This document shows, one piece after another, positions 12,401-60,664 of a DNA stretch of 64,000 bases (positions within the stretch are counted from its first letter, which is position 1; each line of letters begins with the position of its first letter). Origin of the DNA: Lepidodermella squamata (Eukaryota > Animalia > Gastrotricha); the NCBI GenBank assembly GCA_047495785.1, contig JBLDXI010000020.1:2232001-2296000 (forward strand), written 5' to 3'. A program made the position numbers and the translations under genes. Under the pieces are notes generated by a model. The model searched no databases. It saw nothing but the letters and a program-made list of their open reading frames with translations, and was not told where the DNA came from.

Positions 12401-12597
12401 CTGATTTCAGTCGGAACTTGGCTGCCGAAACTCACAGCCTGTGTTGCAATCGATGAATCAAAACTTGCGACATTATGGCCAGTTTTATTCCGCTGACTCG
12501 TTACATTCCTCCAACCTGTTGCCGACACGCTGATAACAGCGGAAGATGGGCTGAATAAGGTGGTTAAAATAGCTAATAATATGGTTAGCGATTTCAT
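9463..12597 (-). CDS. Nicotinic acetylcholine receptor alpha-type subunit (nAChR-3) with long Ser/Thr-rich N-terminal extension
   Basis: Signal peptide MKSLTILLAILTTLFSPSSA, ~135 aa S/T-rich linker, then TDEQRLMNKLFRSYDRHSRPV. Contains [55 protein letters not shown] and M4 DRCLYWLLLGIFTFYTMFLLVIVP. TAA at 9465-9463. Confidence 0.95.
9777..10040. mobile_element. Palindromic MITE/foldback in the last intron of nAChR-3
   Basis: ~100-bp near-perfect inverted arms, ttccaagctggctttctaacctgccgatatcggaaaaatca... and ...tgatttttccgatatcggcagattagaaagccagcttggaa. The core motif recurs at ~29880, ~36015 and ~39500. Confidence 0.8.
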
Positions 12598-23320: not shown

Positions 23321-23734
23321 TCACATAATTTTTGTTACATTAGCATGATGCCCATTGGCTAGTAGATCATAGGATAATCGGTTCTTTCCTTTGCTGATAC
23401 CGCCGATGATGTAAAACGTGTCGCCTTTGTAAACGATTCGCATCTCGATGCCTGTGTCATTTTTCGCCAAAACTTTGCCCTCGACTCGCATCGAATTAAT
23501 CGAGACTTCAAGCGTGTCGCGGTTGAATTGAATTATCACCTGGCCATTCAAAGGGCTCTTGTATTGCCACGCCTTAACGGGTGATATAGTAATATTTTTG
23601 TTCGGCTCGCTAAAATAAATAAAATGCTGTGACCTATTGAGGCAATTAATAGTTTAATTTGCTTACCTTTTCGTGCGACGCACAGAATTGTGTTCCGACT
23701 TAATATTATCAGCGTCACTGCCTTCAGTCGCCAT
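23321..23734 (-). CDS. Small FAIM C-terminal-domain-like protein, paralog A (2 exons)
   Basis: Spliced product MATEGSDADNIKSEHNSVRRTKSEPNKNITISPVKAWQYKSPLNGQVIIQFNRDTLEVSINSMRVEGKVLAKNDTGIEMRIVYKGDTFYIIGGISKGKNRLSYDLLANGHHANVTKIM. By eye it follows the FAIM1 CTD pattern (W..RVVLEKDTMDVWCNG..GTETHF..YI..HTLIVDN). Confidence 0.7.
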
Positions 23735-27588: not shown

Positions 27589-27951
27589 TCACGGACCAGC
27601 GTGGCTAACGTGTTGGCCATTCGCGACTAGTTCGAAAAACCACTGCTTGTACTCTTCTGGAAATAGGCCATTGATGACCAGCTGATCAGAACCGTGGCTA
27701 AATTCGATTTTGATCGTATCATCAGACCGCTCAGTCGCTGACGGAGCCACCAAAACATCGTTTATCTTGATCTCATTCGTCAACTCGTTGAACTCAACTA
27801 GAGTTGATCCAGAGCCAGCTGAATCGTACTCCCATAGGTGAAGTTTACTTTTAACCTGCGAATTTTGGCCAGCTTTTCGCCTGAAAGTAACATAAATTAT
27901 TTTAAAATTTTACTAGTAAAGAAATGCGTACTCAGTCCTAAGATGAGGCAT
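27589..27951 (-). CDS. Small FAIM C-terminal-domain-like protein, paralog C (2 exons)
   Basis: Spliced product MPHLRTERKAGQNSQVKSKLHLWEYDSAGSGSTLVEFNELTNEIKINDVLVAPSATERSDDTIKIEFSHGSDQLVINGLFPEEYKQWFFELVANGQHVSHAGP. Phase-2 first intron, with the W...N...LVANG pattern shared with paralogs A and B. Confidence 0.68.
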
Positions 27952-28554
27952 CGTGTATCTGTTTTTTGTTCTATAGAAAAAGTGAAAAAATTATATAACT
28001 GCCACCGGACTGGGTGGAACCTGGTGAAATAGTGTAGATTTGCGTCATTCGTTGCCGTTGCCACGTGGCGCGCTGGTTGTTTACGTAGAAAAAATATAAT
28101 TAAATTATCGAATCAACCCTAGACGAGCCGGTATCGCAAAATCTCAGGTTTCCTGTCTATCATGAAGCCCGAATAAATTGTACCATCAATAATTCAAAGA
28201 AAAAGTCCTGGACGTAGCCTTGCCTTATTGCGTGGGGAAACTTTGGACGAAGCCATTTTTCTAAGATTAAATTTCATTCTTCATGCAGAAAATTCGAATA
28301 TTTTGGACCAAGCGGGAACGATAATTTCTGGTATTTTTTTTATTTTTTATTATTTTTCCTGATTTTTCTCAAAGCCCCTACATAACCTAACAACGATAAC
28401 GCAAGTTACGGTATCAATCAACTAAATTTGCGAAATTCCAATTTATTTACAACTAAAATACCGACGAAAATTGACAGAAAATTCGTTGTGACAAAAATTG
28501 CAAAAAATTATTAAAAAATAAATGCTAAATTAATTTTTCAATAATCGACGATAG

Positions 28555-31500
28555 TCAGGATTGATTACTAGTATGAGCGTTAACATCTTGATCTACTAAG
28601 AAATAAGTTTTCACAGGGCCAATTCCGTGTATGTTGACCAAATCCGGCCGCTCGTCCAAGTGATAGCCACCCAACACGTCGAGTATCGCCTTCGCCTCGG
28701 CTGAGACGTGAATTTTCATCGGCACGCCGGAGCTTTCAATGTACGACGTGTACGTAACAGCGGCACCGAAAAGGCAGTAGCGCGGCATTTTGAGGCCGAC
28801 CACGCCGGCCATCGCCGCGCCCGAGTGAATGCCGCAGCGGATGCGCAGTGGCGTGTTGGGTTTGTGGCGAATTTTGAAATTGGCGACGCATGTCATGATG
28901 TTGAGCGCGACGCCGGCTATTTCGCCGGCGTGGCGCAGACCGTTCCGCATCGGAAGGCCGGACGCGACCATGTACGCGTCGCCGATTGTTTCGACTTTGT
29001 AAACATCGTAGGAAGAGATTATGTTGTCAAATTGGCTATAAATTAAGACAAAAATTGACCAAAAATTAAGAAAAATATTCAGAAAAATCAAAGCTTGGGT
29101 ACCTGTAAAGGTCGTTGAGAAGGTCGACGATTTGCAGCGGTGTTGAATCCTGATAAATGCATTCAGTTAATCATTATATAGCCCTTATGTTGAACGAATT
29201 TAGCTAGCAATGAGAGTATTTTAACAGGGTATTTTGCTATGGAATTTATGGAAAAATCGAGTCAGTATAAATTTAGGGCAGTCTTGGAAACAGGTAAGGT
29301 ATTACAGACACAAGGGTTACAGGGCTACATCTAAAGCTTCAGCATTAGAATTTATCTAATGGGTCCTCCTCTTACTGAAACTACCTTCCCGGTGAGTGGA
29401 AAATACTTTGCTGTAGCAGAACCAGATATGCTTAAGCGGAATTTTCAATGGGCCTAAAACCTTGCCCAAAACCACTTTCGGAACTTTCAAGGTTGCCATG
29501 ATGGTTGACCAATATAATTCTAAATTTATAGTCATTGAATTTTACGTAAGACGTTGAGATCAATTCTGAAATCATGCTTTGCCTCAAATTCCTATTCGAT
29601 TTAATTAGGAGTTTTAAGAAGATTCTAGAATTTCAAGCATTCTTTCGCCAATGGAACTCCTAAATTTGTAGCGGTGTAGGTTCCGCTCACCGTAAGTTTG
29701 GTTCCGGTAAAAGATATTCCCCTTTATCTAAATATGGTGTTTCGAATTTCACATCTCTTCCTGGAATCTGAATTTTTTGTTATCATACCTAATCGATAGA
29801 TCCCACTATAAATTATGCGTATTTTGCGCTATATGAGCAGTCGCATAGTTACGCCTCAGCCTACGGAGCCATTATCGATTTGAAGTATCGATTTTACAAA
29901 TCAGTGATTTTTCCGAAATCAGCCGCCTAAATTAAATTAAATTAGTGTTGGAACCAAAATTTGGTGTTGCAAACCCTAATTAGTGTCTCGCATGCTATAT
30001 TGTAGGTCATTAACTACTTAAAGTGGGCCGCCGGGTTGGTTACCTAAAGGAAACCAGGTTTCAAGGTATCCTCAGCTGATCAAGTTAAAAGATTTTGAAT
30101 AGTTTTCACGAGATAATTTCTTTTAATATTTGATAGCTTAGTGTGCTGATTTTGATTTGATTTGGTATTTTTTTCAGAATAAATGAAGCCAGCGAAAGAC
30201 ACGTAAAATTGGTTGAATCATAGCAACTGTTAATTTCGCTTTTTGATTCTATTCAATTTGAATATTGATTCTTATCAATTCAATTCGACTTTCATCGACT
30301 TTGTCCCAAATTTTTTCACTCACGGAAGAAAGCGCAGTGAAGCCGACAATGTCGGAGAAGTAAATAGTGACACAGTCGTAAAACTCGGGATGAACCGTCC
30401 GCCCGGCCTTCAACTCTTCGAAAACCGATTGAGGTAGCAGTTTCGACAGCAAGTCTTCCGTGCGGTGCTTTTCAGCACTCAGCTCAGCCGTTCGCTTGTT
30501 CACAATTTCCTCCAACTTCTCAGCGTGCTTCTCCATAATTCGCACCATTTCATCGATTAGATTTGTCTCCCTGAAAGCATGCGAAAAAAACACATAAATA
30601 GGCACGAATAGCGACAAAATAATCAATAAAAATTCTTGTACACGAGGTAATTAAGCGTAATGATGCATCGGCACGACTTACTTTCCCTTGTTCATTTTGC
30701 GCAGCATCTTAGAAATAGCTGGAAAGTCTGGTCGGAAACTTGCGACTTCGTCCCAGCAAATTCTTGCGTAGTTAAAAAAATCAATATTTTGACATTTTTT
30801 CACTCGAAATCGTAAACAACTCACCTTGCGAGCTGGGCTAAATCTGTCATTTGTCCGTCGGCTTCGAAAAGATCTGGCCTAAAGGGTGGATACGTTCCAC
30901 TTTTCACCTTTTCGATAACAGCTGAAAAAAGAGAAATTTTGGAACTTGACTAAGAAAACTTGCAACTACTCACAGGTCTCTGGCAATAGATAGGATTCGT
31001 AAGGTTTTGATCGAGTGATAATTTCGTAAATGATGACACCAAATGAGTAAATGTCCGCCTTTTGACTGCCTCGTATTGGAGCTTTGTTCATTCTTAGAAG
31101 TTCAGGAGCAGTCCATAGCATCGCTAAAAAATTTATAAGTCGGTATATTCGCACTTGAATAAGAACGCGTTTTGCCTATCCGTACTTGGAATCGTACTTA
31201 GAAAGGGTTCCAGCAGCGGATAATTGAAAGTTTTTTGCTCAAAATGCTCTAGCTTGAAATGCTCATACTTCAACTGGTTGGAAAAAGAGATTCCAGTGGA
31301 CGAAATTTTAGGTGATGAAGGTAGGGGAAAACTTTCAGAAAGGTCAGGAAACTCAAGATTCAGTTCTATTGATAAAATCAAACAAAAATATGGTGAGGCT
31401 GGAACCTTTTTTTCAACCAGATGAAGTTCGAGCCTTACTTAGTTTCAAGCCTAGAGCATTTTGAGCAAAAGGATTTTCAATTATCCGCTGCTGGAACCTT

Positions 31501-34500
31501 TTGTAAGTACGATTCCAAGTACGCTCCAATCTCGGAAAAATAAAAAAACCCTCCTTAAAATAAAATTTAAATTTTTTTCCTACCATGAGCCGATGAAGCG
31601 CTGTGACCGAACCGTGAATCGGCCATTTCGTTGTGATGCCCGCCATCGTCGAGATGGAAGCGCTTTTCAATGGCCTGCAAAACAGCTGGCGCCACGTGAT
31701 TGCCAGTCGGCGTGGAGGATTCCTCGAACACCGGCATTGGCATGTTGGCAATGCGGCAGAACCACCGCGAGTCGACTAGAACGTTGTGCGAACTTAGTCG
31801 ACCATGCGATTTTATCGACGACTGGTGTAGAAACGTCATACCAGCGGCGATGTCGCAGGCGAAGGAGAGTTTGAACAGCCGGTCGAGTTGGATGCCGCGT
31901 TTGCGCAGTACGTGGGCTAGCGTGCCTTTTGAACAAAAGGCTTGGATGACGCAAAGCCGGCTCGGGTTTGTTGTTACAGCGATGAATGGGTTGACGTTAA
32001 CGTGACGTAAACTTCGCATTTCTTGCAACTCGGCGATGAGCGCTTGATCGAGGACGCATGTTGATTTTTTGAGGAGGCTTGAGTTCACGAAGTTCAGAAA
32101 TGGGCAAATTAAATATTATTATTAGGTGAAAAGGACACAAATCGATAAAGTGAAGGAGAGGAAAGAAAAGACTTCTCACATGGGTAAAATTCCAGAATTC
32201 AGCTTTCAGCACTCATCCCCGAATATTATTATTTTTTACCAAATTTTACTTGCGAAAATCTTTTATAGAATTTGTTTTGAAGTACAATAGTACCTAAATC
32301 TTCAATATTTCCTGATACGGGGAAAATGCAGGGGCTGAAAATAATTCTTGCAAATTAAGATTTTAAATTTTTGATGGATGCATTGTGGTTCCCAAGCCCC
32401 ACCCGACCAATATAAATAATTCCTGTACAGAACATTTTTTAAATAATTTTCGGAGCTTTGATGGTTTTAGGTTCAAATTGTAGGTTCAAATATTCTGTTT
32501 TAGATAGCTTTTAACTGAAAAGATTAAATTAAAATACTGCTGGAATCCTATTTAACAAGTGAACAGTGATGTTAGCGAATTTTCCAGAATTTTCAGAAAA
32601 TCGCCAACAGTAAGCTGGCTTGGAAAAGAAATATTCCCGGCTTTCATTTATTCTATTCCCCTAAAGATTTTTCAATTTCCAAGTTTTAAATAGATTTGAA
32701 CTTCGAACTTTGAACTTTGAACTTCGAAGTCTATTGTCTCAGCAGCCCTCGATTGAAATCTGAAGACTTATCAAAATCTCTTAATGTCAAAAATTTCGTT
32801 AAACCCCACCTTTCACTTGCCATTTGAAATCAGAATAATCAAGCTAATTTTGCAAAATTTTCCTTTTATAATTACCTGACGTATACTGTTTCACCGCGGA
32901 AGGTAGCCCGGACGAGATTGACGGAATCAGCACCGCCCGCCAATGATCCGTCTTGCCGTGAAGTACCGCCACTCGTTTGATTAGTTGACGTATCACTATC
33001 GTAATTCGTACCAGCCGCTGGGCCTGTTGCCGAACTTGCAATATCGCTGACTTTAGCCACGGCTGAACCTCCTAATAAAGCCGCCACCGGGACCTGAGAC
33101 GCGGCCTTACTCCTGCCTAATCGACTCGCCTCGTTATCCTGATTATACGCGAACTCAATCTCCTGAAAATCAGCTACAACCTCGGCAATCATCGCATTCG
33201 CCTGCTTTTTCATCTGCCGAATTTTCGCTCGAATCGTGAAGAATGAAATAATAATAACTAAGGATAACCCGACAAAACCGCCAATTGCAGCCCCGCTAAC
33301 TAGCCCGGCGTCGACAGGGGGCGGCGGGCAGTTGGACCCTTCAAGTTTGCAAAAATCTTCAACCGGAACTGCCTCGCCACTTCCGGGCCATGTTATCTTG
33401 CTGAGCTGGACAAACGAACCATTCGGTGCTAGTCTCAAAACTCGAATCATCTGATTAACGGGCGACGCTCCGTTGGTGCTAACGGCTTGAACGCTGGATA
33501 TTTCCAGGTCTTTTACAAAACGATCGCAAACATCGTCGTAGATCATTGACGCATTTGAGTCGAAAACTAAAATTCAGAAAAATTCAGAAAAAATTCAGGA
33601 AATTTTCAATAATTTACAGTGAAACGTGCTGTTGCAAAAGAATTCGCCGATTGCCAGCCCGGTTTGTTCAGACAACTGGAGGGCTTTTAGGGAGACGCGT
33701 AATTTATGATAAACAAGTGAATAAAAATCAATATCAGCATTGAAGGTTGACTTTTCTTGAATTTTCACCTGGAAGAAATCGGAAATTATTGAATAAAATT
33801 GAATTTTTCAAACAAATACCGGGAAAATTTGCTCGAAGGGTAGTGGTAAGCTTCGGGCGATCATCAGGCCCTCTCGCCCTGTCTTCACCAAAGCATCATA
33901 GGACCTCGCGACTAAATTGGACGATCTCAGCACCAGATAGACCTTGCCATTAACGTAATCAGCCTGTTTATCCGCCAGATCGGACAATTGCTTGATGAAG
34001 GTCAACATATCAGTCTGGCGGTCGAGCATGATGAAAATCACTGTGCCGTGACGGAGGGCTTCAACAGCCGCTGATTCACTGGCGCATAGCGATCCGCTTT
34101 GGAAGTAACCGGTGCAAAACAGGGTTCGGGTCAGGGTGACTTTAGTCCCGAATTCCTCCCAAATCGTCGCGTTTACGTCTTGAAAAATGTCCTCAAATTC
34201 AGCCCATATCGGCGTGGTTACAAAATGGTACCGCCTCCAGTTGTAAGTTCGCGTGAAGCCTTCGATAATTCGAACAACCGACCTAGCGCCTAGGCCGTCG
34301 AAAATCATCTGCCGCCCGCCGACCGGGTTGATGCCCCGCAGATACGCGAAATTAGGCGCCGAGTGGCGTTGGTAGCAACAGTTTGATAGGATCATTAAAT
34401 CCGGAAATTCCTCGAGTAATCCGTTAATTTCCGTACAGACATCAGCGTTGCATGACAACATGTCGACGAGCATGCGAACTGGAATGTCGCTTTGGTCACC

Positions 34501-34882
34501 CTCCATCAGGCCTTTCTTAAGGGTGCTGCTCGAGCCATTCAGCATGAACTGAGCTCGAATGTCTGGTAAAGGTTGCGAGACGTTGTAACCGTAACGGCGG
34601 TCGTTGAACGTCACCCTCGTTAAAGCTGTAGCATTTAGAGCGGCTCGAAAAATTGTATTAGCCTTAAAAAAAAATTAAATTAATTTTAAATTGAAAAATA
34701 TGTATTGCTATACTTACCAAATTTTGATCCATTGTCGTCGGAAAATCTGGCGGTAATTTTTCTGTTAAAATGGCGACTCGAACCGCCCGAGACGTTTGAG
34801 CCGTTGAAAGTCGCGGAAATGCCAATAAAAACGCAATTAAAACCACACCCGTGTGGCGAAAATTCAGTAGCCTTAATAACAT
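28555..34882 (-). CDS. Receptor (transmembrane) guanylyl cyclase GC-1 with degenerate catalytic Asn/Arg
   Basis: Signal peptide [22 protein letters not shown], divergent ANF-receptor-like ectodomain ([10 protein letters not shown]) and [21 protein letters not shown]. Kinase-homology domain [20 protein letters not shown] and LWTAPELLR, then a coiled coil. Cyclase domain [47 protein letters not shown]. Confidence 0.93.
29710..29925. repeat. Dispersed repeat (second copy ~35855-36055)
   Basis: Both loci share ctggaatct...ttgttatca..cctaa..atagatc..attatgcgtattttgc..agcagtc...gtatcgattttacaaatcagtgattttt. Confidence 0.7.
31181..31522. mobile_element. Foldback/MITE in a GC-1 intron
   Basis: cgtacttggaatcgtactta..ggttccagcagcggataattgaaa..tttgctcaaaatgctctag (31181-31250) is inverted at 31452-31522. 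Confidence 0.75.
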
Positions 34883-36920
34883 TTCATCCGCGAGATTTGT
34901 CAACTCCCTAAAAAAACACAAAAAATTGGAATATAAATTGTGATGGTTTTTCGTCCAAGTCTGCGATGAGTTCACAGTGTCTTAATTTGCGATGACAAGA
35001 CGGATGATGGTGAACATCTGCGTAAAGTGTATAATATAGGCATCTATTAGGAATAATAATTGCGCGATGGTCATGTTCGATTTTTTTTTTCTTCTTGACG
35101 GTGCGCGCCGTTGAAATTTGACGCCCTAGGTACGAACCTATAAGATATGACTTGCTTGTATTATAGCCTTTTTTCGCGCTTCGCTCGTCTAGTAGCCGTC
35201 TCTGGTGAACGTGACGCTCGGTGCATGAATCGTACCAGGCTTGTTGAAGACGAAAAATCTCGCTTTTCCTGTTGCGAATTCTGAAACGTGTATTACTCAC
35301 TCTAATTATTATCACCTGCCCAAAACGCGTAGAGAAGTTGCTGGAAAATCGATCGTGTTATCAAAGCTTTTTCAATTCCAATGAAACGAGAGAGCGCGTC
35401 GTCGAGGCATTCAGCATATCCTGCCAGCTTGTGGGCATATGAATAAATTCCACTTCCTTGAGTATATTTCAGATGTTCACATTTGGACGCCGTGGGCTAA
35501 TCATGCAAAACTATAAAAGCTTGGAAATAACCTAATTTCATTGTCTAACGTCAATAGGCTGGACACTGAGTCATGTTTTTGTGCGATAAATGATGTCTGG
35601 GAATAAAATGCCAGCTAACGAATAAAATCGAGGCATCCCTTTGTCATTATCTCGCACTTCAAAAACACGTCAGTTGGGCAGACGACAATACCGCAAAAAC
35701 TAAATTGCCTGATACAAAATGTTCCCGGTTCTTTGCGATTTCAGGTTTTTCGTTTGTTGATGGATACTGAAGAGCTCCCTGAACCTGGGATTTTTCATTA
35801 GGGTGCGCACTCTAAATTAGGGGTTCCAGCACTAAATTTGAGACTCCATAGCACTAGATTTCCCGAAAATATGTTTTTTCGAGTTTCAAAGTTTTCTCTG
35901 GAATCTCAATTTGTTTGTTATCAAGCCTAACCAATAGATCTTCATATTATGCGTATTTTGCAACTATAAGCAGTCAGTTTATATTTCAGCTTGCAGAGAC
36001 GATATCGAATCCAAGTATCGATTTTACAAATCAGTGATTTTTCCGATATCAGCCGTCGTGGAACCCCACATCGATAGTTTTCCTACGTAGCTTAGGGCGC
36101 CAGGTAGCTAAAATAAAAAATCCTAGGTTCAGGGAATTTCGATCGCAACCCGAGAAAACGCCGAATTCGCAAAGAATATGAAAAATTTCGGGCCAGGGCG
36201 CTTAAATTTAGAGCATACCTTTATATCATATCGCCAATCGTCTGTTATCTGTTCTTTGAGGTATTTGAAAGTTAGCTTCAAGTCCGACTTTAGAATGGTG
36301 CCGATTAGTTTGAGATCATTCCAAAGCGGTGAAAGCAATTCCGAAGGGCGAACAAAATTGCTCTTCAAAAACGTCCACTTTAGCCTCAATTTACCTGGAA
36401 TTGTGCCATTTAAAGTTATCCCCTCCACCTGGACAATTGATAGCTTTACGTTACCTTCCTTTTCATGTACAAATTTTGCCAAGATTCCGCTTGGGTGAGG
36501 AGATTCCCGGAGATTCCCCCAGGTGCAGAGGGGTGATTTTGGCTTTCTGGAACTTCTGATTCCAAAGATCACCAATCGATACTAGATTCGAATTCGGAAG
36601 ACCAAAATCGATAGTCTGTAGTCCCTTAGGTGACGAGTGATTTCCTAAGTTTTGTCTTCAAAAATGATGAAAATTCTCCAAAAAAGACCGAAGAAGCTAT
36701 GCCTCAACGAGGCTTTTCGGGTACGCCAATTCGACAACAAGCACAGTTTATTTAATTCCAGTGTCACTTTTTAGGTTTTTCCAACGAGTTGAGGATGGAA
36801 AGAAAGTAGAGTTTCGGGTTTTAGCACAAAAATAAGCCGGATAATTTACTCCAAATAATATTGAAAATAGTAGGCACAACAAATGAGTTAGAACCCTACT
36901 TCAATTGTGTATCGTCCTTA

Positions 36921-39900
36921 TTATTTGAACTCGTGTTCTTCGATTGAAGCAGCGAGTCGCAGATCCGGCATCGGCTTGTTGAACCCATCCTTTCCCAACA
37001 AATAATATGTCAGCACCTGACCTTTACCCTTCATCGACACCATCCCACGTTCAGTCAGATGATAACCACCCAAAATATCCAGGATTCGTTTACTCTCAGG
37101 ACTGACGTGAATTCGAAGCGCCAGGCAGCTACTCTCCATACGACTTGCGTAGTTGACAGTATCGCCGAATAAGCAGTATCGAGGCATTTTCAGTCCGATA
37201 ATGCCGGCAACAACCGGGCCGGAATGAACACCGCATCGAAGCTGCAGCTGCATGCCAGGTCGATGGCGGATTCGGAAAGTCGCGGCGCAACTCATGATGT
37301 CCAGGGCCATGGTTGCGATTTCACCAGCGTGACGGTTATGACTACGCTTGGGTAAACCGGAGGCTACCATGTACGAGTCGCCGATAGTTTCGACCTTGTA
37401 AACGTCGTAGCCATCGATTATCGTATCGAAAGCGCTAAATTTATAAAATCACAATTTATTTTAATTTTTCTAAAATTTAAAATTGTCAGCATTTTCAAGT
37501 CGAAATTTAAATTTAAAATTTAAAATTAAATTTTTTAAATAAATAAATTTGAAAATTAAATTCTTAAATTTTTTTGAAAAATTTGAAAAATTTAAAAAAT
37601 TAAGGTCCCTACTTACGTGTACATGTCGTTGAGAAATTCGACAATATCGATAGGTGCCGAAGCCGATGCCATTTTAGTGAAACCAACAACGTCCAAAAAG
37701 CTGACAGTGACAGATTCGTAGGACTCGGGATTGACACTTCGGCCGTTTTTCAGTTCTTCCAGTACGGATTTAGGCAGCATTTTTGACAGTAATTCCTCCG
37801 ATCGTTTCTTCTCCTCATTCAACTGTGACGTTCTTTGAGCCACCATTTGCTCGAGGGATGACGCGTAAAGCTCCATAGTTTGAACCATGCAGTCGACTAA
37901 ATTTGTGTCCCTTTAAAAAAATTGTTGAATTTTTGCGAATTTTTTTAAAATGAAACTAACTTTCCATTATTGATTTTTCGAAGCATGGTAACTATCGCGG
38001 AAGCATCCGGGCGAAACGCTGCCACCTCATCGATACACATTCGGGACAGTTCAACCAGGTCATTAAGGTCAGGGGCACATACAATTTGGGGCCGGAAAGG
38101 TGGATAAACCCCCTCGGCAACTCTGCGCAGAATCACTGAAAAATCGGGGAATTTTTTTTGAAAAAAACTGAAAAATTCAAATAAACCATTAAGTGGCAAG
38201 TTGTAGGACTGAAATGCCTTTTTTCTCGTGATGATTTCGCACAAAATAATTCCGAACGAGTAGATGTCGGATTTCTTACACCCGCGCGCCGGTGGGTCGG
38301 AGAGGCGCAGAAGTTCGGGCGCTGTAGTCACCTTAAAATCAAACTTGGCAATTGCGCTGTCTACATTTTCCGGATTTTCGGGCGTCGCGCTGTCGCTTTC
38401 AGCCACGTCATCTTCAGCCTCTTGCAACGTGATGTTGTATTGAGGTAGAGCGGGTGTTGGCGACAAAACAGCCGGTTCGAACCCGTAGCCGCTTTTTTCG
38501 AACCTCGGAAGCGGTAAATTTGCGATTCGGCAGAACCAACGTGAATCGACCATAATATCATCGGCCGATAATCGACCATGTGATCCGACGCTTGATGTGT
38601 GGAGAAACGCCAACCCAGCAGCGATGTCACAGGCAAATGACAGTTTGAAGGTTCGATCGAGCTGAACCTTCCGTTCGAACAAAACCTAGGAGTAAATTTG
38701 ATAAGTCTTTATTTTTTAAACATTGTGAAAAATAAAAAAATTGGATTTTCTAAAATTAAAATTTGAATTTTTAAAGGCAGACCGTCATAACAGCAAATAC
38801 CCAAAACAGCAGACGCGACAAAACAGCAAATTTTTCAGCGAGCGACATAACAGCAGAAACACGATGCATCTTTTACATAGCAAGTTTTCGCTGTTTTGTC
38901 GCGAAATAAAAAATTTGCTGTTTTGTCGCATTCGCTGTTTCGCGAAGTTGCTGTTTTGTCGCCGTACCTTTTTGAAGTGAATATTCAAATTTTTAAATTA
39001 AAAAAATTATAATTTGCCTGTGCCAATGTGCCTTTCGAACAATACGGCTGTATGGTGCAAATTCGATTTTTGTCATTCGTGACAGCAATTAGCGGGTTGA
39101 TATTGACGTGAAGTAGGTCATGAGCTTCGATGAGTTCTTGCAGCACAGCGTCATCGATTGCGCAGTCGATTTTGCGCAGTTGTTTGACGTAGACTTTTTC
39201 GGAGCGGAAAAAAGCGGCAGCAAGTCGCGTTTCGAAAACGTCGCCAAACGCACCGCCGATGCCTGTTACTAGAACATTTTAATTCAGTTGAAATGTTGAG
39301 ATTCGAACGAGTCGATAAAGATTGAGCTTGGAATTGAGTGGCTTAATCTCTTGAATGTAGGGTTCTAGGATTTTTCAAAAATAATTTGAAATTTTTTTAA
39401 ATATGGTTTTCGATTCTTTTACGTCTTCCCCCAAGTCTCTAATGTTTAGACCAATAGACCTCAATATTACGCTATAAGCTAACGAGCCGATATCGATTCC
39501 AAGTATCGATTTTAAAAATAAGTGATTTTTCCGATATCGGCAATTTGAGAAGCTAATATTGAGAATAATTGTACCTATAGCTGAAGTAGGGTAAATAGAT
39601 CGCAAAATTCATGGAATTGAAAAAAACCGAAATTTCATAAATGGGAAAATTGCAGAGAGGTATAACCACAATTGAATGATAGTGAATTGAATGTGATTTG
39701 GGAATTACCTGATGTAGCAGCTTGAGAGTTCGAATCCCCATTCGGGTGAACTTGATGATGGCCAGCGCTCGAAGATCTACCAAGAGGAGTCGCTCGATCG
39801 GCTATCTTCGGAGTATTCGCGGGTTTCCCGTTTTCATTCGCGTGATTATGTCCCAAATACTGATTTTCATCCTCCTCAAAAAAATTCAACTCGTTGTACC

Positions 39901-41666
39901 TAGAATATTTTTTTTAACAATTTCCAGAATTTTGTTTCTTGAAAATACCTTGCGATAACTTGGTCTTTAATCGTTTGCTGCCGCTGGCCTTTTTGGCGGA
40001 AATGCCGGATGACAACAGTTAGGATTAGTACCAAGAGGATACTGCCGGCGGATCCAGCTCCAGATGCGATTCCAATCATTCGCTTGTCAACCGGCGCCGG
40101 TCGAATGCAGACGCCATTAACCGACTCGCAAATATTTTCCCGAGGCGGCGCCCATTTCGACCCAGGCCAAAGCGGTTGATTTACGGTTTCGACGACCATA
40201 TGACTGAACGAGAGATTTCTCGGAATCCCACGCGATGTTCGAAATTCGAAGACCTTCGGAGCTTTGTAGACCTGCTCAGAGCTGGACCATTTGAGGTTTA
40301 GAACTTCAAAATTGTTGGTACGTCGATCGCATGATTCATCGAAACTGATGGTATGATCAATGTCCAAGACTGGAAAAAAATTATTAAAAAATTATTTTTA
40401 CGAAAAATTTGGGACTAACATTGATAAGTCCTATTACAAAACATCCTATGTAGGAATCTCAGTTGGCCATATGGGTTGTGTTGGACAGCAGCAGATACGA
40501 GGCGAATTTCTTCGTAAATCATAGTCCTCAAATTCCGATCAAACGGATTGAGAGCCCGGAATAGATCACCCTGAACATTCGGTAGACCCTGTTTACGGCG
40601 GAAAATCATCAATCCATCTAATGTAGGATCGCCCAAATTGTCGGTGGCATAGTCGAAGAGTTGGCTCGGCATTCTTAGAGCAGCAGCGCTCCATTCAACC
40701 AAGAAATAGGCCTTGCCATTGTGAATTATGCTGTCGTCAACCTGGCCGATTTGCCAGATGATTTCAGCCAAATCTTCATCTTCGTCCAATATCAAGAAAA
40801 ACGCCGTTATATCGCGGCCTAGCAGCGACTTGACCACATCCCATTGCATCGAATATCGTTGAATTAATTTCGTTGAATAAAACAATTTTATCAAAGAAAT
40901 TGAGAATAAAGTCGAATCGTCGTCTTCGAAATCGGTGTTGGTTAAATTCGCCCGAATCGCTCGATTTTTAGCGGCTACAACGCGCTGAACTGACTCGTTA
41001 ACAGCGGAGAAAAACGTACTCGCCCCATAAATTTGGGGTGAAATTAAAAATCCAAAGTGATACCAGTTGTACTTCTCGCTGAGGGCTAGGATGAAATTAG
41101 CCATTTCCTCCGGATTTATTACGTTAAAAACGACGTTGTTGTTCTTTAACGATTGCTGCCTTGTAGTTCCGTGATCTCTCCAGCAACAGTTTGTAATGGC
41201 GCTGATACTTGGAACCTCGTTCGCCAGCTCACGGAACTCGTCACAGTCCATTGGCCCACGGGTCGAGCAGTTCGTAGCTTCGATGACGACTTTCGTGCCT
41301 ATACTCAGGCTGGTTTCGCCCGGGAATAATTTGTAAAAATCACTGAAGGTCAAATAGATGGGTTCAACTGAGATCGAACTGTCATTTGACGTCCAACGAA
41401 GCACTCGGTTCGTGTTCTGCTCAATGACCCGTGTCGAATTTCGATTTGTAGCAAAACTGGCGAGCGATACTACGGCATTTGCCTTGAAGGTAAATCCGAA
41501 ATTTTTCAATTTTTTCAAAATTTTAAAATCAAACCGTTGTCTCGTTTAGAGAAAAATCAAGGTCGGTCTTTGTTAGTTGATCTACAACAATTGCGACCTT
41601 TATCGAAGCACTTTGCCCGCGATAAGCGAGGAACAATAAAATAGGTAAAAATATACAGGCTTTCAT
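36921..41666 (-). CDS. Receptor guanylyl cyclase GC-2 with complete catalytic site
   Basis: Signal peptide [20 protein letters not shown], ectodomain ([10 protein letters not shown]) and [25 protein letters not shown]. Kinase-homology domain [20 protein letters not shown]. Cyclase domain [45 protein letters not shown], ending EEHEFK. Confidence 0.95.
38778..38968. mobile_element. Short MITE built of aaacagca modules (inverted copy at ~50284-50648)
   Basis: gtcataacagcaaatacccaaaacagc...aacacgatgcatctttt matches the reverse complement of 50531-50643. The end gctgttttgtcgccgtacc matches the reverse complement of 50284-50302. Confidence 0.75.
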
Positions 41667-48252: not shown

Positions 48253-50283
48253 CCTGATTTCTGTTATTGTTTATTTTTCGAAATGAAGCTGTTTAAAATG
48301 TCAACAAGTCATTCTCATGCATACTGCACTTGTACTACGTCTCGGACGAAGTACGGTTCTTTCAGTTTTTTGCCGCAATGAAAGGTGGTAATCGTTTCTC
48401 TCAGCGCTACTTGGCAACGCAAAAATGGCATCGCATCTACATTGATAAACTCTGCAACATGAATATATCATGCATAGGGGCGGGTACGATTAACAATCCA
48501 ACCCCGGATTGCTTTAGATCCGAAAGAGTCTAAAGCAATATAACTCACATTGTTATACCTATTCCAAAACATCGATAATGTGCATTCCTACAGACTTACT
48601 GAAAAGCAAAATAAATGTTTGACCCCGTGAGATTTTGATGCCACTTTCAAGATCAATGAAGGAGGTGTCGAACGATTTCCAAAAGAGGTTGATAGTCATC
48701 ACGGTTGCTGAGAAAATGAGCTTCAAAGTTTACGGGTGGAAATTGCTTTTAATTTTGAAAAATGCGCGCTCAATTTTTTTCATTGCATCAATAAATAAAT
48801 CGTTGCGCAATAAATTCTGATGCTATTTTCTTATGCGTTGTCGACATTTTTTTGGGGTAATCTGAGGTGAAGAATCTAGCTATTATTCCCCGCTATTGGC
48901 TTCAAATTGAGATGCCAGATTACAAAGAAACACAAGCAGTATTCTCATGATGAATAACCAGGTTGAAACAGGTTTTCAAAATACAGCTAAAGAAAAGTTG
49001 CGCTGATATGTTAACCTTTCAAACCACTGTTTTATGTGAGCCCTCTGGGCTTTCTTTATTTGTCTGTTGCGCTATTATACACGGTCCGTAGTAACTCAAA
49101 TTTTATATCAGTCGAGCTTCAGCAACCTTAAGCTCTGAGCTTTGATTAGATCGAGTCAAAGTTGAGTTATACCATGGGCATTAAGAAAGTTATGCACAAC
49201 AAAATCGCCATTTTGATAGGGTTATAGTTGAAGATCGTCGGACTCTTATTTGAGATAGCCGGTATGCAAAAACTCGTATAGCAGCAATGGTAATCTGCAA
49301 ATGATAGTAAAGTGAGTTGCATAAATGAAAAAACTGCTTCAAAAATCTCATTCGCGATGGTAATTTAATAATGCTCCTGGGTTGGTTAAATTCTAAAGAA
49401 CTGACCGTATCTCGCAAAATCGCCTTCAACTCTACTTGGACAAGCTCCGCCAAGTTTGTCAGGACTGCAGCCTCTAATAATGAACTTCGCCCCACCTTCC
49501 ACCGCAATCATAGTCTGTAATATTAAAAAGCGGTAAGTAGCCAATAATACCAATAAAACGCCAAATTCTTACCATGCACTTGTAGTTACATGCAAACGTA
49601 TCAACCATGTTTGTTTTGTAACAAATAATCGCCTCCGACGCTGAGGAGTAGCAAACTTTAAGACAAGAAACCAGAAAAAGAGCCTATATACCTCGGATTA
49701 ACGTAGTTACAGTTACAAATAAGAAAATAGCAAAATTTAGGCTACCTTCCATTCTTCTTTAAAAAGTTACTTTTTGCCAGTATTTAACCATTTGCCTCTT
49801 CATTGTTTCCCGATCCATTAGTCCTTGTTTGGTGACGGTTGACGGAAAAGCGCGCGCATGTTGTGCTTTTTGCTATTTTGCGCTTTGTGCGTCGTATCTC
49901 GCATCGCTTATATTCTCGTAACTGGGATAATCTGATGAATCTTGCTAGATATTCAACAATTTTGATGGAATCAAGCTAGTGCTTCCACATCAACCTAAAC
50001 CGATAAGCCTTTTCGGCGACGTTTTCGGCTCTCCCGTCTTTTGAGATGGATGGGAGCTTCCTAGACAATGATGTGTGACACCACTTGAGCGTTCTAATTT
50101 AAAGTGATTTTTCCAAAATCGTTTTATGATGGATTCTTACTAATATTGATACGGCCGATCGAATATTGGCTTCCGTTTTTTCAAAATTCGCTTCGGAAAT
50201 CAAAGGTGCCAATTGCAAATTTCATCCGAATTACAAACTGTTTACCCCAAAATGATCATATTAGTCATCTGAGTCGATGTGCG

Positions 50284-50648
50284 GGTACGGCGACAAAACA
50301 GCAACTTCGCAGAACAGCAAATTATTTATTTATTTATATATCGTTAGCGGCGCGCCGAAACAACCACTTAGATGAGTCCATTCGATCGTACTTTAAGTCG
50401 TCGAGCGTAATATGATGAAGTACGATAGGCCATTTGAGCACTGATTTTTTCTTCTCTCGATCGTACTATCAATATAAAATCTATAAGTAAATAGTGAAGT
50501 GGTTGTTTTGGCGCGGCGCTAACGATATACAAAACAGCGAAAACTTGCTATTTAAAAGATGCATCGTGTTTCTGCTGTTATGTCGCTCGCTGAAAAATTT
50601 GCTGTTTTGTCGCATTGGCTGTTTTGGGTATTTGCTGTTATGACGATG
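50284..50648. mobile_element. Copy of the aaacagca MITE with a nested inverted-repeat insertion (~50337-50529)
   Basis: Outer parts match 38778-38968. The inner atatcgttagcggcgcgccgaaacaaccactt and aagtggttgttttggcgcggcgctaacgatat are inverted. Confidence 0.65.
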
Positions 50649-51248
50649 TGCGTAAACATTCATAAAATGCGGACATCGAATTAGACTGCTTGGACCTGAT
50701 ATTTTGCTACTTTTGTATTCGGTATGACATCATGGCCCAAAGCTCGACGCTGTAACCGGTAATCGAAACGCTGGTGCCAGCGATTTATGTGATCGATCGA
50801 TTTGTAATTAGTTCAGATTTTTACTCCAGGGCAATGAGCAAATCGCCTGCCCTATGGCCCCCATTGCGTTTCATGTTTTACATGGCGAGTGAGCACTCTA
50901 TTAGCTCTATGATGAAAAGCAAGAACTCCATAGATAACATTCGTTGTTTTATTTTTCCAACTTTTTCAAGACACAGATTTTTGACAAAAATCGGATGTCG
51001 CATTGATGGCGAGCAAATCATAACAAACTAAAGCGAAAAAACAAGCAGTGTATCTTCAAAGAGCTCGCGTTTATAATCGAATTCACAGCCATGGTTTTCG
51101 TAGTAATTGCAAATATTTTTTAAATTATCCAGCACGGCGATTTGTTGTAATATTTCAATTTGAAAGCTCGAAGATCATCAACAGAAATACTGAAATTAAA
51201 TTCGTAATTAAAATTAATTGATTTTTTATTCAAAGCTATGACGGATTA

Positions 51249-54200
51249 TTATTTTCCGGTAATAATGTGATCGACCGTGACGAGGCCAATAGCAACCACT
51301 GCCCAGGCGCAGACAAGAATCAGCCATACGATGTGGCCGAAGGGTGACTTATGCGGGTTTTTCGCGGCGACATTCGCTGCGCTGGGCAGAACTTTGACCA
51401 GCTCCGCCAGTCGTTTCCGGCCGAAATACACCAAAGCAGCTGGTATCAGGTATTGAACAAACGCGCCGGCATATGAGCCGGTTATGCCGACTAGCAGCGA
51501 CACATTGTCGGTGATCAGGGCCAGGGCGACCGGGGGCAACAGAGCGACGAGGGGCAGGATGATTCGCTCGACGTAGAATGGCAACTTGTGGCGATCTGGT
51601 GGGCGCAGAGTTGGCGGGGGCAGATCGGCGGGGCTTGCCAAGGCATCAGTGGCCTGAAATGTCATTAAAAATCAAAATAATTAGTAAAGAACGGCTAACG
51701 GTAATGTCTTTGAATTACCAATTCGGAGAAATTCCCAGGATAATTTTAAAATTTTAACTTTTAACGCAAAAATTCATCCTCTGCATCCCTAAACGAAAAT
51801 TCGAAGGTGTAAACGTGTTTACAAATAATTTTGATGATCGCAGAAATCACTAGCATGTGACATAAAAAATCTGGCTTGGCGAAATGCTCAGGTGTTGGTT
51901 ACGAAATTCGAAAAATTCGAAGTTGGCACTAATTGACGTTAAAATGGGTCACACGACTAAAACTCATCAAATTTACTAATGTTTTCCTGTGGCGAAAGAA
52001 TAATTAATTTTCAGATGTCAAAATAAGCCATAAAATAAGCTCAGATACACACTGCTAATTTCAAGTAAAATTAAAAAATTAATAAATTAATTATTGTCCA
52101 GGACAAATGATTGCGATTTATTCGACTTTCAGAGCAAAACCTGTTTCGGTTTTTTCTGCCTTTCAACCCCCGCCGACTTCCAGTCCTGTTTAATCGTTGC
52201 ATCTTCGAATTCTTCTCGTCGAAACGCGCCTATCGTTCTATACATTTATTAGGACTGAAGGTTGGCTGTGCCCCTTATAATTGCTCGAAGTCTAGAAAAA
52301 TGCGATTTGAATAGCGTTTCCAGCCACTTTTAGGAATTTTTTGGACCAAACTACCGACGATACATTTATACGCAGCAAATCCCTAGCAACTTTCTAGCAA
52401 TATTAGTTTCATAAAATGTTGCTCCGTAGGGAGATATTAGCCTATAACCGACCCTAAAATATCAAACCGAAAGGTAATTTTTTTACTTTTTCAATCGAGG
52501 AAATCAAATCTCAGCAATTTTTTCTGCTACTAGATCTGACTTAACAGCCATGTCCCATCGACTACCTCTTTCGTTTTTATGACTTCTATGCTAGCGCGAT
52601 TTATATTTTCCGCATGGAATCAGAACCTGATGCGAACTATGCGCCCACTTGTTTAGCGCACGGGTGTCGAATTTCCGAAATTCGAAAATCGATTTTTGGC
52701 TTGACTGGAAAAATTCGGCCGTGAAAGGGTTAAGGCAAAAAATCAAAATTTCGATATAATATGTAAGGGTAAAGTAAAAAAGAAGCCATCACTTACCCCA
52801 GTTCCATAATCAGCGTGTTCGATAAGCAACGAGCCTTCGCCGCGGTTTCTCCGCCTTCGAAATGTTGAGATCAACGCGAGCACAAACGCGTGAATATTGT
52901 TTCGCAGCGTGATAGCAATAATCGGGAAACTAGCACTGATTGTGAAGACCGGAAACAGGGCGATAAAATATTGCAGCGGAACAAGGGCAGTGGCGGGCGC
53001 GGGGTTCGGGCCGCTGTCGCAGAAGCCAGGCCGGAAGTTGAGCGTATACAAACTTTCGATGTGGTCGAAGGCGAAAATGCCGGTTATAGCCAGGAGTAAG
53101 TAGAACAGCAGCACGACGATGAAATCTCCGGCCAGAAGCATGTTCACCTGGCGCTTCTGACGGATAGGCGTGATAAGAGACGGCAAGCTGTGGTGACACA
53201 TGAACGCGTAGACGGCTGAACCAAACAGCTGTGGCACCCCGCCAATTTCTCCTAAAATAACGAAAAAAATTAGATTATCGGCTCAAAAACTAGCAAAATA
53301 TTGGTTTACACAGCGTGTCCATATGTAACGCAAGCAAAGAAAATACACGCCGAACGAAAGTACGGGTGTTGCACTAAACATTTTGTACAGAATTTCCCTA
53401 ATCTCATTTCTATTTCAGCTGAGCTTTCCAACGATATTATGTCACCTGGATGTATGGCTCATAAATAAATAAAATAAAATAAATAAATAAACAAATAATT
53501 ACGGTTTCTACCTTCTTAACGGTTTATACATTACATTTCACATTACATCATCTTATATGTGTCGTACCGTTTTAAGCCATCCTCCCAAAAGGCAATTGGG
53601 ATAACCCATGAGGCAATATGCCCAAGATGGAGATATAAGATATCGCTAAGGACAATAATTGACAGTATCTAGAAACTCCGAATATTTTTTCTTGTAGCCT
53701 AAAAAGGTTGCTCACTGATTAAATTCCCAACTCACTGGGTTGATAGAGATATAGTGAAGCTTTCCCGAAGTTCAAGCGCCAAAAACCGACAAATAGATCA
53801 TAGTTGGCAGCTGAAACTTTTGCTGAACCTTCCAGGTTCAAGATAATGATCTTAGTTCCGACTGATTAATTTCGCCATCTGAAGCAATTGATCAGTCTAA
53901 AAAGTAAACCCAACCCCCTAGTTCACATAAATCGGATTTCATGGAGGTTGAAAGAGTCTCTAAGATCAACTTCTTTGGAAAAAAGGAATCCGAAATGTCA
54001 AGCTAGGTGAACCACATACTAGAACTGGGGAACCGGAATTGAGACTGCTAGGGTTGACATCCTTTAGGAAAATATAAATTTGAGTATTATTAGAAATTTC
54101 CAGCCATTAATGCCGAAAAATGATAATAAGTAGAGAATAAATTGAAAATACCAGGATTATCGGTCATCGATGTATCGTTTTGGGAAATAATTATTTTGGG

Positions 54201-60570: not shown

Positions 60571-60664
60571 CTGAAATTATCGAAAAAAACAACATTTAGA
60601 CTTGAGGATATTTTTACATTAATCAAAGCTCAAATAAATCCGACTTTTATTTCATCGATGAAAA

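What the first reader, a model, noticed from the sequence alone, without database searches (positions are those of the whole stretch)
28555..41666. Tandem receptor guanylyl cyclase pair with sGC-like alpha/beta asymmetry: candidate heterodimeric receptor GC
Seen: two adjacent same-strand receptor GC paralogs sharing ectodomain NCC and YNW motifs and the kinase-homology motif [13 protein letters not shown]-2 has the full motif [19 protein letters not shown]-1 (~28730-28785) reads [17 protein letters not shown], so the transition-state Asn is Thr and the Arg is Tyr. GC-1 still keeps both metal-binding Asp (FSDIVGF, IGDAY) and shows no stops or frameshifts in the exons read. Known: class III cyclases make the active site at a dimer interface, with the Asp pair from one chain and Asn/Arg from the other. 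The soluble GC alpha subunit (FGNNVTLANKFES) has this same half-site, including Thr at the Asn position, whereas receptor GCs are usually described as homodimers. Inference: GC-1 is inactive alone but can complete one site with GC-2, giving a receptor GC with two different ectodomains, or it acts as a tuned inhibitor.
Basis: partly seen in the sequence, partly recalled or inferred. Interest (0 to 1): 0.85.

Follow-up and report, generated by a model that had tools for sequence, protein, structure and literature searches.

The report
Half-site receptor guanylyl cyclase beside complete paralogue
Two neighbouring receptor guanylyl cyclase genes of an unidentified small-intron animal are both intact; one has lost the three active-site residues that a partner chain normally supplies, yet it is transcribed and strongly conserved, so it probably works only when paired with a complete cyclase, as is already known for nematode ODR-1/DAF-11 and for soluble guanylyl cyclase.

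Summary
Both genes lie on the minus strand. GC-2 (41666-36921) has 9 exons and 1179 aa. GC-1 (34882-28555) has 11 exons and 1148 aa. Both are intact: signal peptide, ectodomain, one membrane helix, kinase-homology domain, coiled coil and class III cyclase.

GC-2 has all eight canonical catalytic residues. GC-1 keeps both metal Asp, the phosphate Arg and the Glu/Cys base pair. It has lost ribose Asn (Thr), phosphate Arg (Tyr) and phosphate Lys (His). This is the sGC-alpha / AC-C1 pattern.

GC-1 is not decaying:
- An independent run covers only its exons and carries a 52-nt GT..AG joint at a predicted intron.
- Exonic variants are 20 synonymous to 1 nonsynonymous, and all 7 listed indels are intronic.
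- A syntenic orthologue in a distant relative is 83% identical over coiled coil plus cyclase and shares the Arg and Lys losses, but keeps Asn.

The heterodimer reading is therefore well motivated. The partner is untested: GC-2 is complete on its own, and the two genes are not adjacent in the relative. Obligate heterodimeric receptor GCs are already known in C. elegans, so this is a new, independently evolved member of a known kind. The scan has also noted half-site cyclases of other families (NIT-type) elsewhere in this genome.

The parts
28555..34882 (-). GC-1 gene, 11 exons, 1148 aa. Exons: 34882-34718, 34662-33820, 33768-33618, 33566-32876, 32077-31584 (donor may instead be 31608), 31123-30974, 30921-30825, 30762-30682, 30570-30324, 29149-29103, 29035-28555 (includes the stop).
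   Evidence: Every junction is GT-AG and in frame. Pfam finds PK_Tyr_Ser-Thr, HNOBA-type linker and Guanylate_cyc on the exons. Contigs of run X1 cover exons only.
36921..41666 (-). GC-2 gene, 9 exons, 1179 aa. Exons: 41666-41535, 41482-40420, 40369-39949, 39899-39709, 39268-39018, 38685-38187, 38135-37961, 37910-37617, 37434-36921 (includes the stop).
   Evidence: Junction enumeration and alignment to GC-1; Pfam. Its expression was not tested.
28732..28782 (-). GC-1 degenerate motif [17 protein letters not shown]. Cys1076 (base) is kept. Asn is replaced by Thr1083 and Arg by Tyr1087. Also Asp to Ala, Thr to Ala, Ala to Thr and Met to Ile.
   Evidence: The columns are 94-98% conserved in 150 receptor GCs.
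28612..28635 (-). GC-1 reads NIHGIGPV where canonical cyclases have (M)KGKG. The phosphate-binding Lys is His1125 and the second Lys is Ile1127.
   Evidence: Residue role from PMC6005667 Table 1.
30339..30359 (-). GC-1 FSDIVGF: the first metal-binding Asp is retained.
28972..28992 (-). GC-1 ETIGDAY: the base-specifying Glu and the second metal-binding Asp are retained.
28819..28842 (-). GC-1 IRCGIHSG: the alpha-type phosphate Arg (equivalent of sGC alpha Arg574) is retained.
   Evidence: The position was mapped by motif onto PMC6005667 Table 1, so this is an inference.
37131..37181 (-). GC-2 canonical motif [17 protein letters not shown] (Cys, Asn and Arg present).
37014..37034 (-). GC-2 MKGKGQV: the phosphate Lys is present.
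37679..37699 (-). GC-2 FLDVVGF: the first metal Asp is present. The second is in ETIGDSY at 37391-37371.
30922..30973 (-). GC-1 intron 6 (52 nt, GT..AG), seen spliced out in run X1.
   Evidence: A joint 30921/30974 in an X1 contig is identical to the only junction allowed by the gene model.
33226..33309 (-). GC-1 transmembrane helix (about aa 473-500). It holds the only nonsynonymous variant seen, G478A.
   Evidence: Hydropathy; variant table.
40005..40079 (-). GC-2 transmembrane helix (about aa 496-520).
   Evidence: Hydropathy.
38686..39017 (-). GC-2 intron 5, the only GC-AG intron (CAG|GCAAAT). It holds a palindromic MITE-like element. The integrity of GC-2 depends on this intron being spliced.

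Best explanation
GC-1 is a functional receptor guanylyl cyclase subunit of the alpha / C1 type. Class III cyclases build each active site across the dimer interface. One chain gives the two metal-binding Asp and one phosphate Arg. The other chain gives the base-recognising Glu/Cys, the ribose Asn, a phosphate Arg and a phosphate Lys. GC-1 keeps the first set, and also Glu/Cys as sGC alpha does, but has lost Asn, Arg and Lys. A GC-1 homodimer would therefore have two crippled sites. A dimer of GC-1 with a complete receptor GC would have one fully competent site (GC-1 Asp pair plus the partner's Glu/Cys/Asn/Arg/Lys) and one degenerate pseudo-symmetric site, as in sGC and membrane adenylyl cyclases. 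Shown here: the residue pattern, gene integrity, transcription and splicing, purifying selection, conservation of the pattern in an orthologue, and a burst of change followed by stasis. Inferred: heterodimerisation itself. GC-2 is the adjacent, closest complete paralogue and so the first candidate partner, but only a candidate. I put about 0.3 on that specific pairing. If it is right, the receptor would carry two ectodomains that are only about 20% identical.
For: Residue roles come from PMC6005667 Table 1. GC-1 keeps roles 1-5 and loses 6-8, while GC-2 keeps all eight. Among alignment columns at least 85% conserved in 150 receptor GCs, GC-1 or its orthologue differs at only 11, and 9 of these lie in the two motifs FGDTVNxASRM and GxxxxKGKG. 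The loss is therefore targeted, not general decay. Transcription: X1 contigs cover exons and have zero depth in every non-repeat bin that is wholly intronic, and one carries the predicted 52-nt GT..AG joint. Selection: 20 synonymous against 1 nonsynonymous exonic variants, pN/pS about 0.015, binomial P about 4e-12 (2e-10 with a transition bias of 4); all 7 listed indels are intronic. Orthologue P0163/L001 has a FAIM-like gene downstream as in the window, is 83% identical over coiled coil plus cyclase, and reads FGAAVNYTSHIES and LHGIG. Tree: the GC-1 clade has 100/100 support, a stem of 0.59 and tips of 0.12 and 0.16; it sits within a 97/95 clade whose other members (GC-2, L005 gene, P0101) and outgroups are canonical. 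dN for GC-1 against its orthologue is 0.147, against 0.253 for GC-2 against the L005 gene; dS is saturated. All five alpha-type residues are retained in both species, which a non-catalytic domain would not need. Precedent: ODR-1/DAF-11 (PMC5225109, PMC8045692).
Against: There is no direct evidence of any heterodimer. GC-2 is complete and could act alone, so nothing forces the pairing. In the only relative available, the GC-1 orthologue has a GH17-like gene upstream, and the GC-2-like genes sit on other contigs. GC-2 expression and co-expression were not tested. The orthologue keeps Asn, so the degree of catalytic loss differs between lineages. Conservation of the Asp/Glu/Cys residues could also reflect nucleotide or metal binding without turnover. 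The variant counts come from assembled contigs, not reads, and 3 of 43 variant rows were not shown.
Confidence: 0.55

Rival explanations
1. GC-1 is a non-catalytic pseudo-cyclase receptor. It binds ligand and perhaps nucleotide, and signals or regulates without making cGMP. It could act as a scaffold, as a decoy or clearance receptor, or as a tuning subunit that lowers the output of whatever receptor GC it dimerises with.
For: Three catalytic residues are lost, while the whole protein including the cyclase domain is conserved. Other notes of this scan report many half-site or dead cyclase domains in this genome (unchecked).
Against: All five alpha-type residues (two Asp, Arg, Glu, Cys) are retained in both species across a divergence at which dS is saturated. 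A dimer with a complete partner would still have one competent site, so a pure inhibitor role does not follow from the chemistry.
Confidence: 0.25
2. GC-1 homodimers retain low or altered cyclase activity. Thr, Tyr/His and His would partly replace Asn, Arg and Lys, so the gene encodes a low-gain or differently regulated homodimeric receptor GC.
For: The orthologue keeps Asn and has His at both the Arg and Lys positions. His can carry a positive charge. Sporadic receptor GCs with conservative changes at these sites exist elsewhere.
Against: The three positions are 96-98% invariant in 150 receptor GCs. Established mutagenesis of the equivalent adenylyl cyclase residues is recalled to lower kcat strongly; this rests on my own knowledge and was not checked here. 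Tyr in this lineage is neither basic nor similar to His, so there is no selection for a specific substitute.
Confidence: 0.14
3. GC-1 is a decaying duplicate (an expressed pseudogene), or the motif is an assembly error.
For: Catalytic residues are lost. There is a long, repeat-bearing intron inside the cyclase domain.
Against: The reading frame of 1148 aa is intact, with 10 clean GT-AG introns. Variants are 20 synonymous to 1 nonsynonymous and all listed indels are intronic. The gene is spliced. The orthologue is 83% identical with shared changes. The motif is present in contigs of two other runs.
Confidence: 0.02

Closest known systems
C. elegans ODR-1/DAF-11 and other GCYs predicted to be obligate heterodimers (Morton 2004, as cited in PMC5225109 and PMC8045692)
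   Same: These are single-pass receptor GCs with a kinase-homology domain. Individual chains lack some catalytic residues, so a complete site needs two different chains. The genes arose by lineage-specific duplication.
   Different: The origin is independent. GC-1 nests in a clade of complete receptor GCs whose nearest named relatives are molluscan. In the worm pair each monomer is said to supply essential residues; here only GC-1 is deficient and GC-2 is complete. The worm pair has functional evidence (chimera rescue); this pair has none.
Soluble guanylyl cyclase alpha subunit (human alpha-1, PDB 6jt0_A; alpha-3, 4ni2_A)
   Same: The half-site pattern is the same: both Asp, Arg, Glu and Cys are kept, and Asn, Arg and Lys are absent (PMC6005667 Table 1). 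The motif even has Thr at the Asn position: FGNNVTLANKFES against [13 protein letters not shown].
   Different: GC-1 is a membrane receptor with an ectodomain and a kinase-homology domain, not an H-NOX/PAS protein. It is much closer in sequence to receptor GCs (GC-A E=1e-48 against sGC alpha about 1e-25). The resemblance is convergent. The sGC beta partner is itself deficient in one Asp; GC-2 is not.
Membrane adenylyl cyclase C1/C2 pseudo-heterodimer
   Same: There is one catalytic and one degenerate site. C1 supplies the Asp pair and Arg; C2 supplies base, ribose and phosphate contacts.
   Different: The two halves are fused in one polypeptide and specify ATP. Here they are separate genes with Glu/Cys (GTP) specificity.
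Mammalian homodimeric receptor GCs (GC-A/NPR1, PDB 9bcv and others; GC-C, 8fx4)
   Same: These are the best solved-structure matches to both cyclase domains. They share the domain order and the juxtamembrane WPG...C...C motif. GC-2 has the full catalytic set, as they do.
   Different: The ectodomains here give no Pfam ANF_receptor hit; only language-model features point to that fold. GC-1 lacks three catalytic residues.

Membership tests
Receptor (particulate) guanylyl cyclase | Class III cyclase catalytic domain (PF00211) at the C-terminus | tested here: met
   GC-1 E=5.7e-42 and GC-2 E=1.4e-37 on the last exons. GC-A structures match at E=1.4e-48.
Receptor (particulate) guanylyl cyclase | Kinase-homology domain between the membrane helix and the cyclase | tested here: met
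   PF07714 gives E=4e-18 for GC-1 and 1e-9 for GC-2.
Receptor (particulate) guanylyl cyclase | Coiled-coil / signalling-helix linker before the cyclase | tested here: met
   The C-terminal part of PF07701 matches at E=8e-4 and 2e-4, below the gathering score. The region is 93% identical between GC-1 and its orthologue.
Receptor (particulate) guanylyl cyclase | Signal peptide and a single transmembrane helix | tested here: met
   Each protein has a hydrophobic N-terminus and one hydropathy peak (aa 473-500 and 496-520). This is a simple hydropathy scan, not a dedicated predictor.
Receptor (particulate) guanylyl cyclase | ANF_receptor / periplasmic-binding-protein type ectodomain | tested here: inconclusive
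   No Pfam or PDB profile hit. hhalign gives only a 24-column match at the YNW strand. The AF2 model failed, pLDDT 43. Language-model features put all ten best named clusters in PF01094, score 0.92.
Receptor (particulate) guanylyl cyclase | GTP-specifying Glu and Cys | tested here: met
   VETIGD and RYCLFG are present in both genes.
Catalytically self-sufficient (homodimeric) cyclase | All eight catalytic residues in one chain (Asp, Glu, Asp, Arg, Cys, Asn, Arg, Lys) | tested here: not met
   GC-1 has Thr, Tyr and His at positions 6-8. GC-2 meets the feature.
Alpha / C1-type half-site cyclase subunit (works like sGC alpha) | Keeps both metal Asp and the alpha-type Arg; lacks Asn, Arg and Lys | tested here: met
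   The orthologue lacks Arg and Lys but keeps Asn.
Alpha / C1-type half-site cyclase subunit (works like sGC alpha) | Forms a heterodimer with a chain that supplies the missing residues | not testable with these tools
   No multimer modelling, interaction data or co-expression data were available.
Alpha / C1-type half-site cyclase subunit (works like sGC alpha) | Partner carries the complementary defect (obligate on both sides, as in sGC beta) | tested here: not met
   GC-2 has all eight residues.
Orthologue of nematode DAF-11 or ODR-1 | Groups with those genes in a tree | not tested
   The worm sequences could not be fetched. Indirectly unlikely: GC-1 sits with 97/95 support among complete paralogues of its own lineage, next to molluscan sequences.

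The most novel reading that the evidence does not exclude
GC-1 and GC-2 form a receptor with two unrelated-looking ectodomains and a single catalytic site, that is, a two-input (coincidence or ratio) sensor. More broadly, this animal may run a combinatorial system in which many alpha-like half-site subunits from several cyclase families (receptor-GC type here; NIT-type and H-NOX-type noted elsewhere in the genome) share a few complete partners.
Probability: 0.12. Interest if true: 0.7.

Novelty: new member of a known kind. Interest (0 to 1): 0.42.

Why it matters
This is a clean natural example of a homodimeric receptor enzyme evolving into an asymmetric one outside nematodes. After a duplication, one copy lost exactly the residues that the partner chain can supply, in a short burst, and was then frozen by selection. 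It converged on the sGC-alpha motif down to the Thr. The case offers a testable pair for asking whether receptor GCs can integrate two different ectodomains through one catalytic site. Together with the other half-site cyclases noted in this genome, it suggests that asymmetry in cyclase signalling is used widely in this poorly sampled lineage. It does not change the known principle.

Tried and rejected
- Pseudogene or assembly error: rejected.
- Exhaustive representative search with the GC-1 cyclase exon: none of the best 150 hits shares the Thr/Tyr state, and the best is 64% identical.
- Search of the 90% clusters: one orthologue only, P0163 at 77%.
- JGI metagenome scan with the GC-1-specific C-terminal alignment: best hit 58%, no further orthologue.
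- dN/dS between species: dS is saturated, so only dN could be compared.
- Synteny of the intronless GC-2-like gene P0101 (contig L008) with the window through Neur_chan and Aa_trans neighbours: not supported; only weak hits at 21.7-21.9 kb.
- Ectodomain fold: AF2 on a 5-row alignment gave pLDDT 43, so no fold search was run on it. Pfam, a PDB profile and hhalign gave nothing usable.
- The 'opposite strands' joints of X1 contigs could not be interpreted and were ignored.
- Organism identity: the Nup85 fragment has one database relative at 49%, so the lineage remains unnamed.
Full report
**What is there.** The region holds two genes on the minus strand. They are the only receptor guanylyl cyclase (rGC) genes in the window (tblastn). 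I enumerated in-frame GT-AG junctions between the coding segments and checked them against the paralogue and against database homologues.
- GC-2 has 9 exons (41666-36921) and encodes 1179 aa.
- GC-1 has 11 exons (34882-28555) and encodes 1148 aa. Neither has an internal stop.
- Each protein has a hydrophobic signal peptide, an ectodomain of about 450 aa, one membrane helix, a kinase-homology domain (PF07714), a coiled-coil linker (weak PF07701 matches) and a class III cyclase domain (PF00211, E=1e-37 to 1e-42).
- The two proteins are 40% identical overall, about 20% in the ectodomain and 60% over coiled coil plus cyclase.
- Two junctions are uncertain in detail: the GC-1 exon 5 donor (31584 or 31608) and the exon 2 donor (33820 or 33814).
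- GC-2 needs one GC-AG intron (39017-38686) to stay in frame.

- GC-1 reads [17 protein letters not shown] at 28782-28732. GC-2 reads [17 protein letters not shown] at 37181-37131.
- Both carry [11 protein letters not shown] and the ectodomain NCC and YNW motifs.
- The alignment to the solved GC-A structures is gap-free across the motif.
- The eight catalytic residues of class III guanylyl cyclases are tabulated in PMC6005667, Table 1: metal Asp, base Glu, metal Asp, phosphate Arg, base Cys, ribose Asn, phosphate Arg, phosphate Lys.
- GC-2 has all eight.
- GC-1 has the first five: [22 protein letters not shown] (placed by motif) and RYC. It has Thr1083, Tyr1087 and His1125 at the last three.
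- In sGC and adenylyl cyclase the first group is supplied by the alpha/C1 chain and the last three by the beta/C2 chain. GC-1 therefore has exactly the alpha pattern.

**The loss is targeted.** I aligned coiled coil plus cyclase of GC-1, its orthologue and 150 other rGCs.
- GC-1 or its orthologue departs from columns that are at least 85% conserved at only 11 positions.
- Nine of these lie in the two motifs FGDTVNxASRM and GxxxxKGKG.
- The other two are in the coiled coil and the linker.
- Everything else that is conserved in rGC cyclase domains is kept.

**GC-1 is expressed and constrained.** Contigs of run X1 (a 2015 study) lie only on GC-1 exons.
- Every non-repeat bin that is wholly intronic has zero depth.
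- One contig skips 30922-30973, a 52-nt stretch with GT..AG ends on the minus strand. This is the single junction my gene model allowed there.
- X1 is recorded only as 'RNA?'. The exon-only cover plus the spliced joint is what makes it RNA.
- Its contigs cover 28626-28927, including the motif, with at most one difference each.
- Across X1 and the DNA run X2, 21 of the listed single-base differences fall in GC-1 exons: 20 synonymous and 1 nonsynonymous (G478A in the membrane helix).
- All 7 listed indels fall in introns.
- With 2342 nonsynonymous and 715 synonymous sites, pN/pS is about 0.015. The chance of at most one nonsynonymous change in 21 is about 4e-12, or 2e-10 with a transition bias of 4.
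- Caveats: these are differences between assembled contigs, not read counts, and 3 of 43 rows were not shown.

**An orthologue exists and shares most of the loss.**
- A search of the 90%-identity clusters with the last GC-1 exon found one close relative, P0163 (77%). Everything else is at most 63%.
- P0163 lies on four contigs of ENA metagenome assemblies (L001-L004). The gene there matches GC-1 better than GC-2 in every domain.
- It is followed by a FAIM-like gene that matches the genes just downstream of GC-1 in the window. I take it as a positional orthologue.
- It reads FGAAVNYTSHIES and LHGIG. Asp to Ala, Thr to Ala, Ala to Thr, Met to Ile, loss of the Arg (His) and loss of both Lys (His, Ile) are shared. 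The Asn is still present.
- The Arg and Lys losses therefore predate the split of the two species. Asn to Thr is a later change on the window's lineage.
- Synonymous sites between the species are saturated. Even so, coiled coil plus cyclase is 83% identical (dN 0.147), against 70% (dN 0.253) for GC-2 and its best counterpart, the L005 gene.

**Tree.**
- With LG+C20, GC-1 and its orthologue form a 100/100 clade on a long stem (0.59 changes per site) with short tips (0.12 and 0.16).
- This clade sits in a 97/95 group with GC-2, the L005 gene and P0101. All three are canonical, and the order within the group is unresolved.
- The nearest named sequences are molluscan 'atrial natriuretic peptide receptor-like' proteins.
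- The half-site state therefore arose within this lineage after a duplication. It is independent of sGC alpha and, as far as the tree can show, of the nematode cases.
- A burst of change followed by stasis is the pattern of a copy that took on a new, constrained role.

**How it most likely works.** A GC-1 homodimer would have two sites lacking the ribose and phosphate contacts. A dimer with a complete rGC would have one intact site, made of the GC-1 Asp pair and the partner's Glu, Cys, Asn, Arg and Lys, plus one degenerate site. This is the geometry of sGC and of C1/C2 adenylyl cyclases.
- Both species retain all five alpha-type residues while the beta-type contacts decay. That is the main argument that GC-1 still takes part in catalysis and is not a pure pseudo-enzyme.
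- This step is inference (confidence 0.55).
- GC-2 is the adjacent and closest complete paralogue, so it is the first candidate partner. I put that specific pairing at about 0.3 for three reasons. GC-2 has no complementary defect. In the relative, the GC-1 orthologue has a GH17-like gene upstream, and the GC-2-like genes lie on other contigs without a GC-1-like neighbour. GC-2 expression was not examined.
- Rivals: a non-catalytic or purely modulatory receptor (0.25), residual homodimer activity (0.14), and decay or artefact (0.02).

**Comparison with what is known.**
- C. elegans ODR-1/DAF-11 are described as an obligate heterodimeric rGC in which each monomer supplies essential catalytic residues. 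Several other GCYs are predicted to be the same on sequence grounds. Chimera rescue experiments give support (PMC5225109, PMC8045692).
- The present pair is a further, independently evolved instance, with a one-sided defect. I could not fetch the worm sequences, so orthology to them is untested, though unlikely from the tree.
- Degenerate Asn/Arg states also occur sporadically in other animals' rGCs and in 5 of 78 metagenomic cyclase loci.
- Other notes of this scan report half-site cyclases of NIT and H-NOX type elsewhere in this genome. I did not check those notes.

**Ectodomains.**
- Neither ectodomain gives a Pfam hit, and a 5-row profile finds nothing in the PDB.
- hhalign against a canonical ANF_receptor ectodomain aligns only 24 columns around the YNW strand.
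- An AlphaFold model was unusable, with pLDDT 43.
- Language-model features place the GC-2 ectodomain among ANF_receptor clusters (score 0.92, all ten best).
- Both proteins keep a juxtamembrane WPG...C...C motif, which I recall as typical of rGCs.
- A strongly diverged ANF-receptor fold is likely but not shown.

**Verdict.** The heterodimer interpretation is well motivated but untested, and the partner is open. The principle is already known, so this is a new member of a known kind, of moderate interest.

Noticed in passing
window 38686-39017 (minus strand) and about 50250-50650: GC-2 intron 5 is the only GC-AG intron of either gene. It holds a palindromic MITE-like element (about 38783-38965, arms GCGACAAAACAGCAA). 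A longer copy lies at about 50.25-50.65 kb. GC-1 has no intron at this site.
   Followed up: partly
window 29450-30050: There is a very high-copy repeat inside GC-1 intron 9. Contig depth in the DNA run X2 rises to about 41,000 against a baseline of about 70, and many loose ends flank it.
   Followed up: no
L001-L008 (ENA metagenome contigs): The only database relative of this lineage has rGC genes with few or no introns (P0101 is a single 1122-aa ORF), against 9-11 exons here. Intron density therefore differs greatly between the relatives.
   Followed up: partly
L001:5232-6209: A secreted glycoside-hydrolase-family-17-like ORF (my reading of its motifs, not scanned) lies directly upstream of the GC-1 orthologue. 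It has no counterpart in the window.
   Followed up: no
window 23336-23584 and 27610-27876; L001:10746-11255: The FAIM-like mini-genes downstream of GC-1 have a counterpart (47% identity) directly downstream of the GC-1 orthologue, so this microsynteny is conserved.
   Followed up: partly
window 28450-34440: The DNA run X2 shows half-depth alternative contigs (about 43 of 90), clustered in short bubbles. This suggests two fairly divergent haplotypes or very recent copies. The listed single-base differences are about as dense in exons as in introns but almost all are synonymous, so synonymous sites look more variable than introns.
   Followed up: partly
window 59508-60626: A Nup85 fragment has a single database relative, 49% identical, from an ENA metagenome. 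The organism belongs to a poorly sampled lineage.
   Followed up: partly
window 10206-12597, 15171-15773, 52743-57270: Other genes in the window are a Cys-loop ligand-gated channel (Neur_chan LBD and membrane parts), an alpha-kinase domain and an Aa_trans amino-acid transporter.
   Followed up: no
window 28700-28731; PDB 4ni2_A: After the degenerate motif, GC-1 and its orthologue read SSGVPM(K/R)IHVS. This resembles sGC alpha (SCSVPRKINVS) more than canonical rGCs (NGEALKIHLS in GC-A). It may be a second convergent feature or chance.
   Followed up: no
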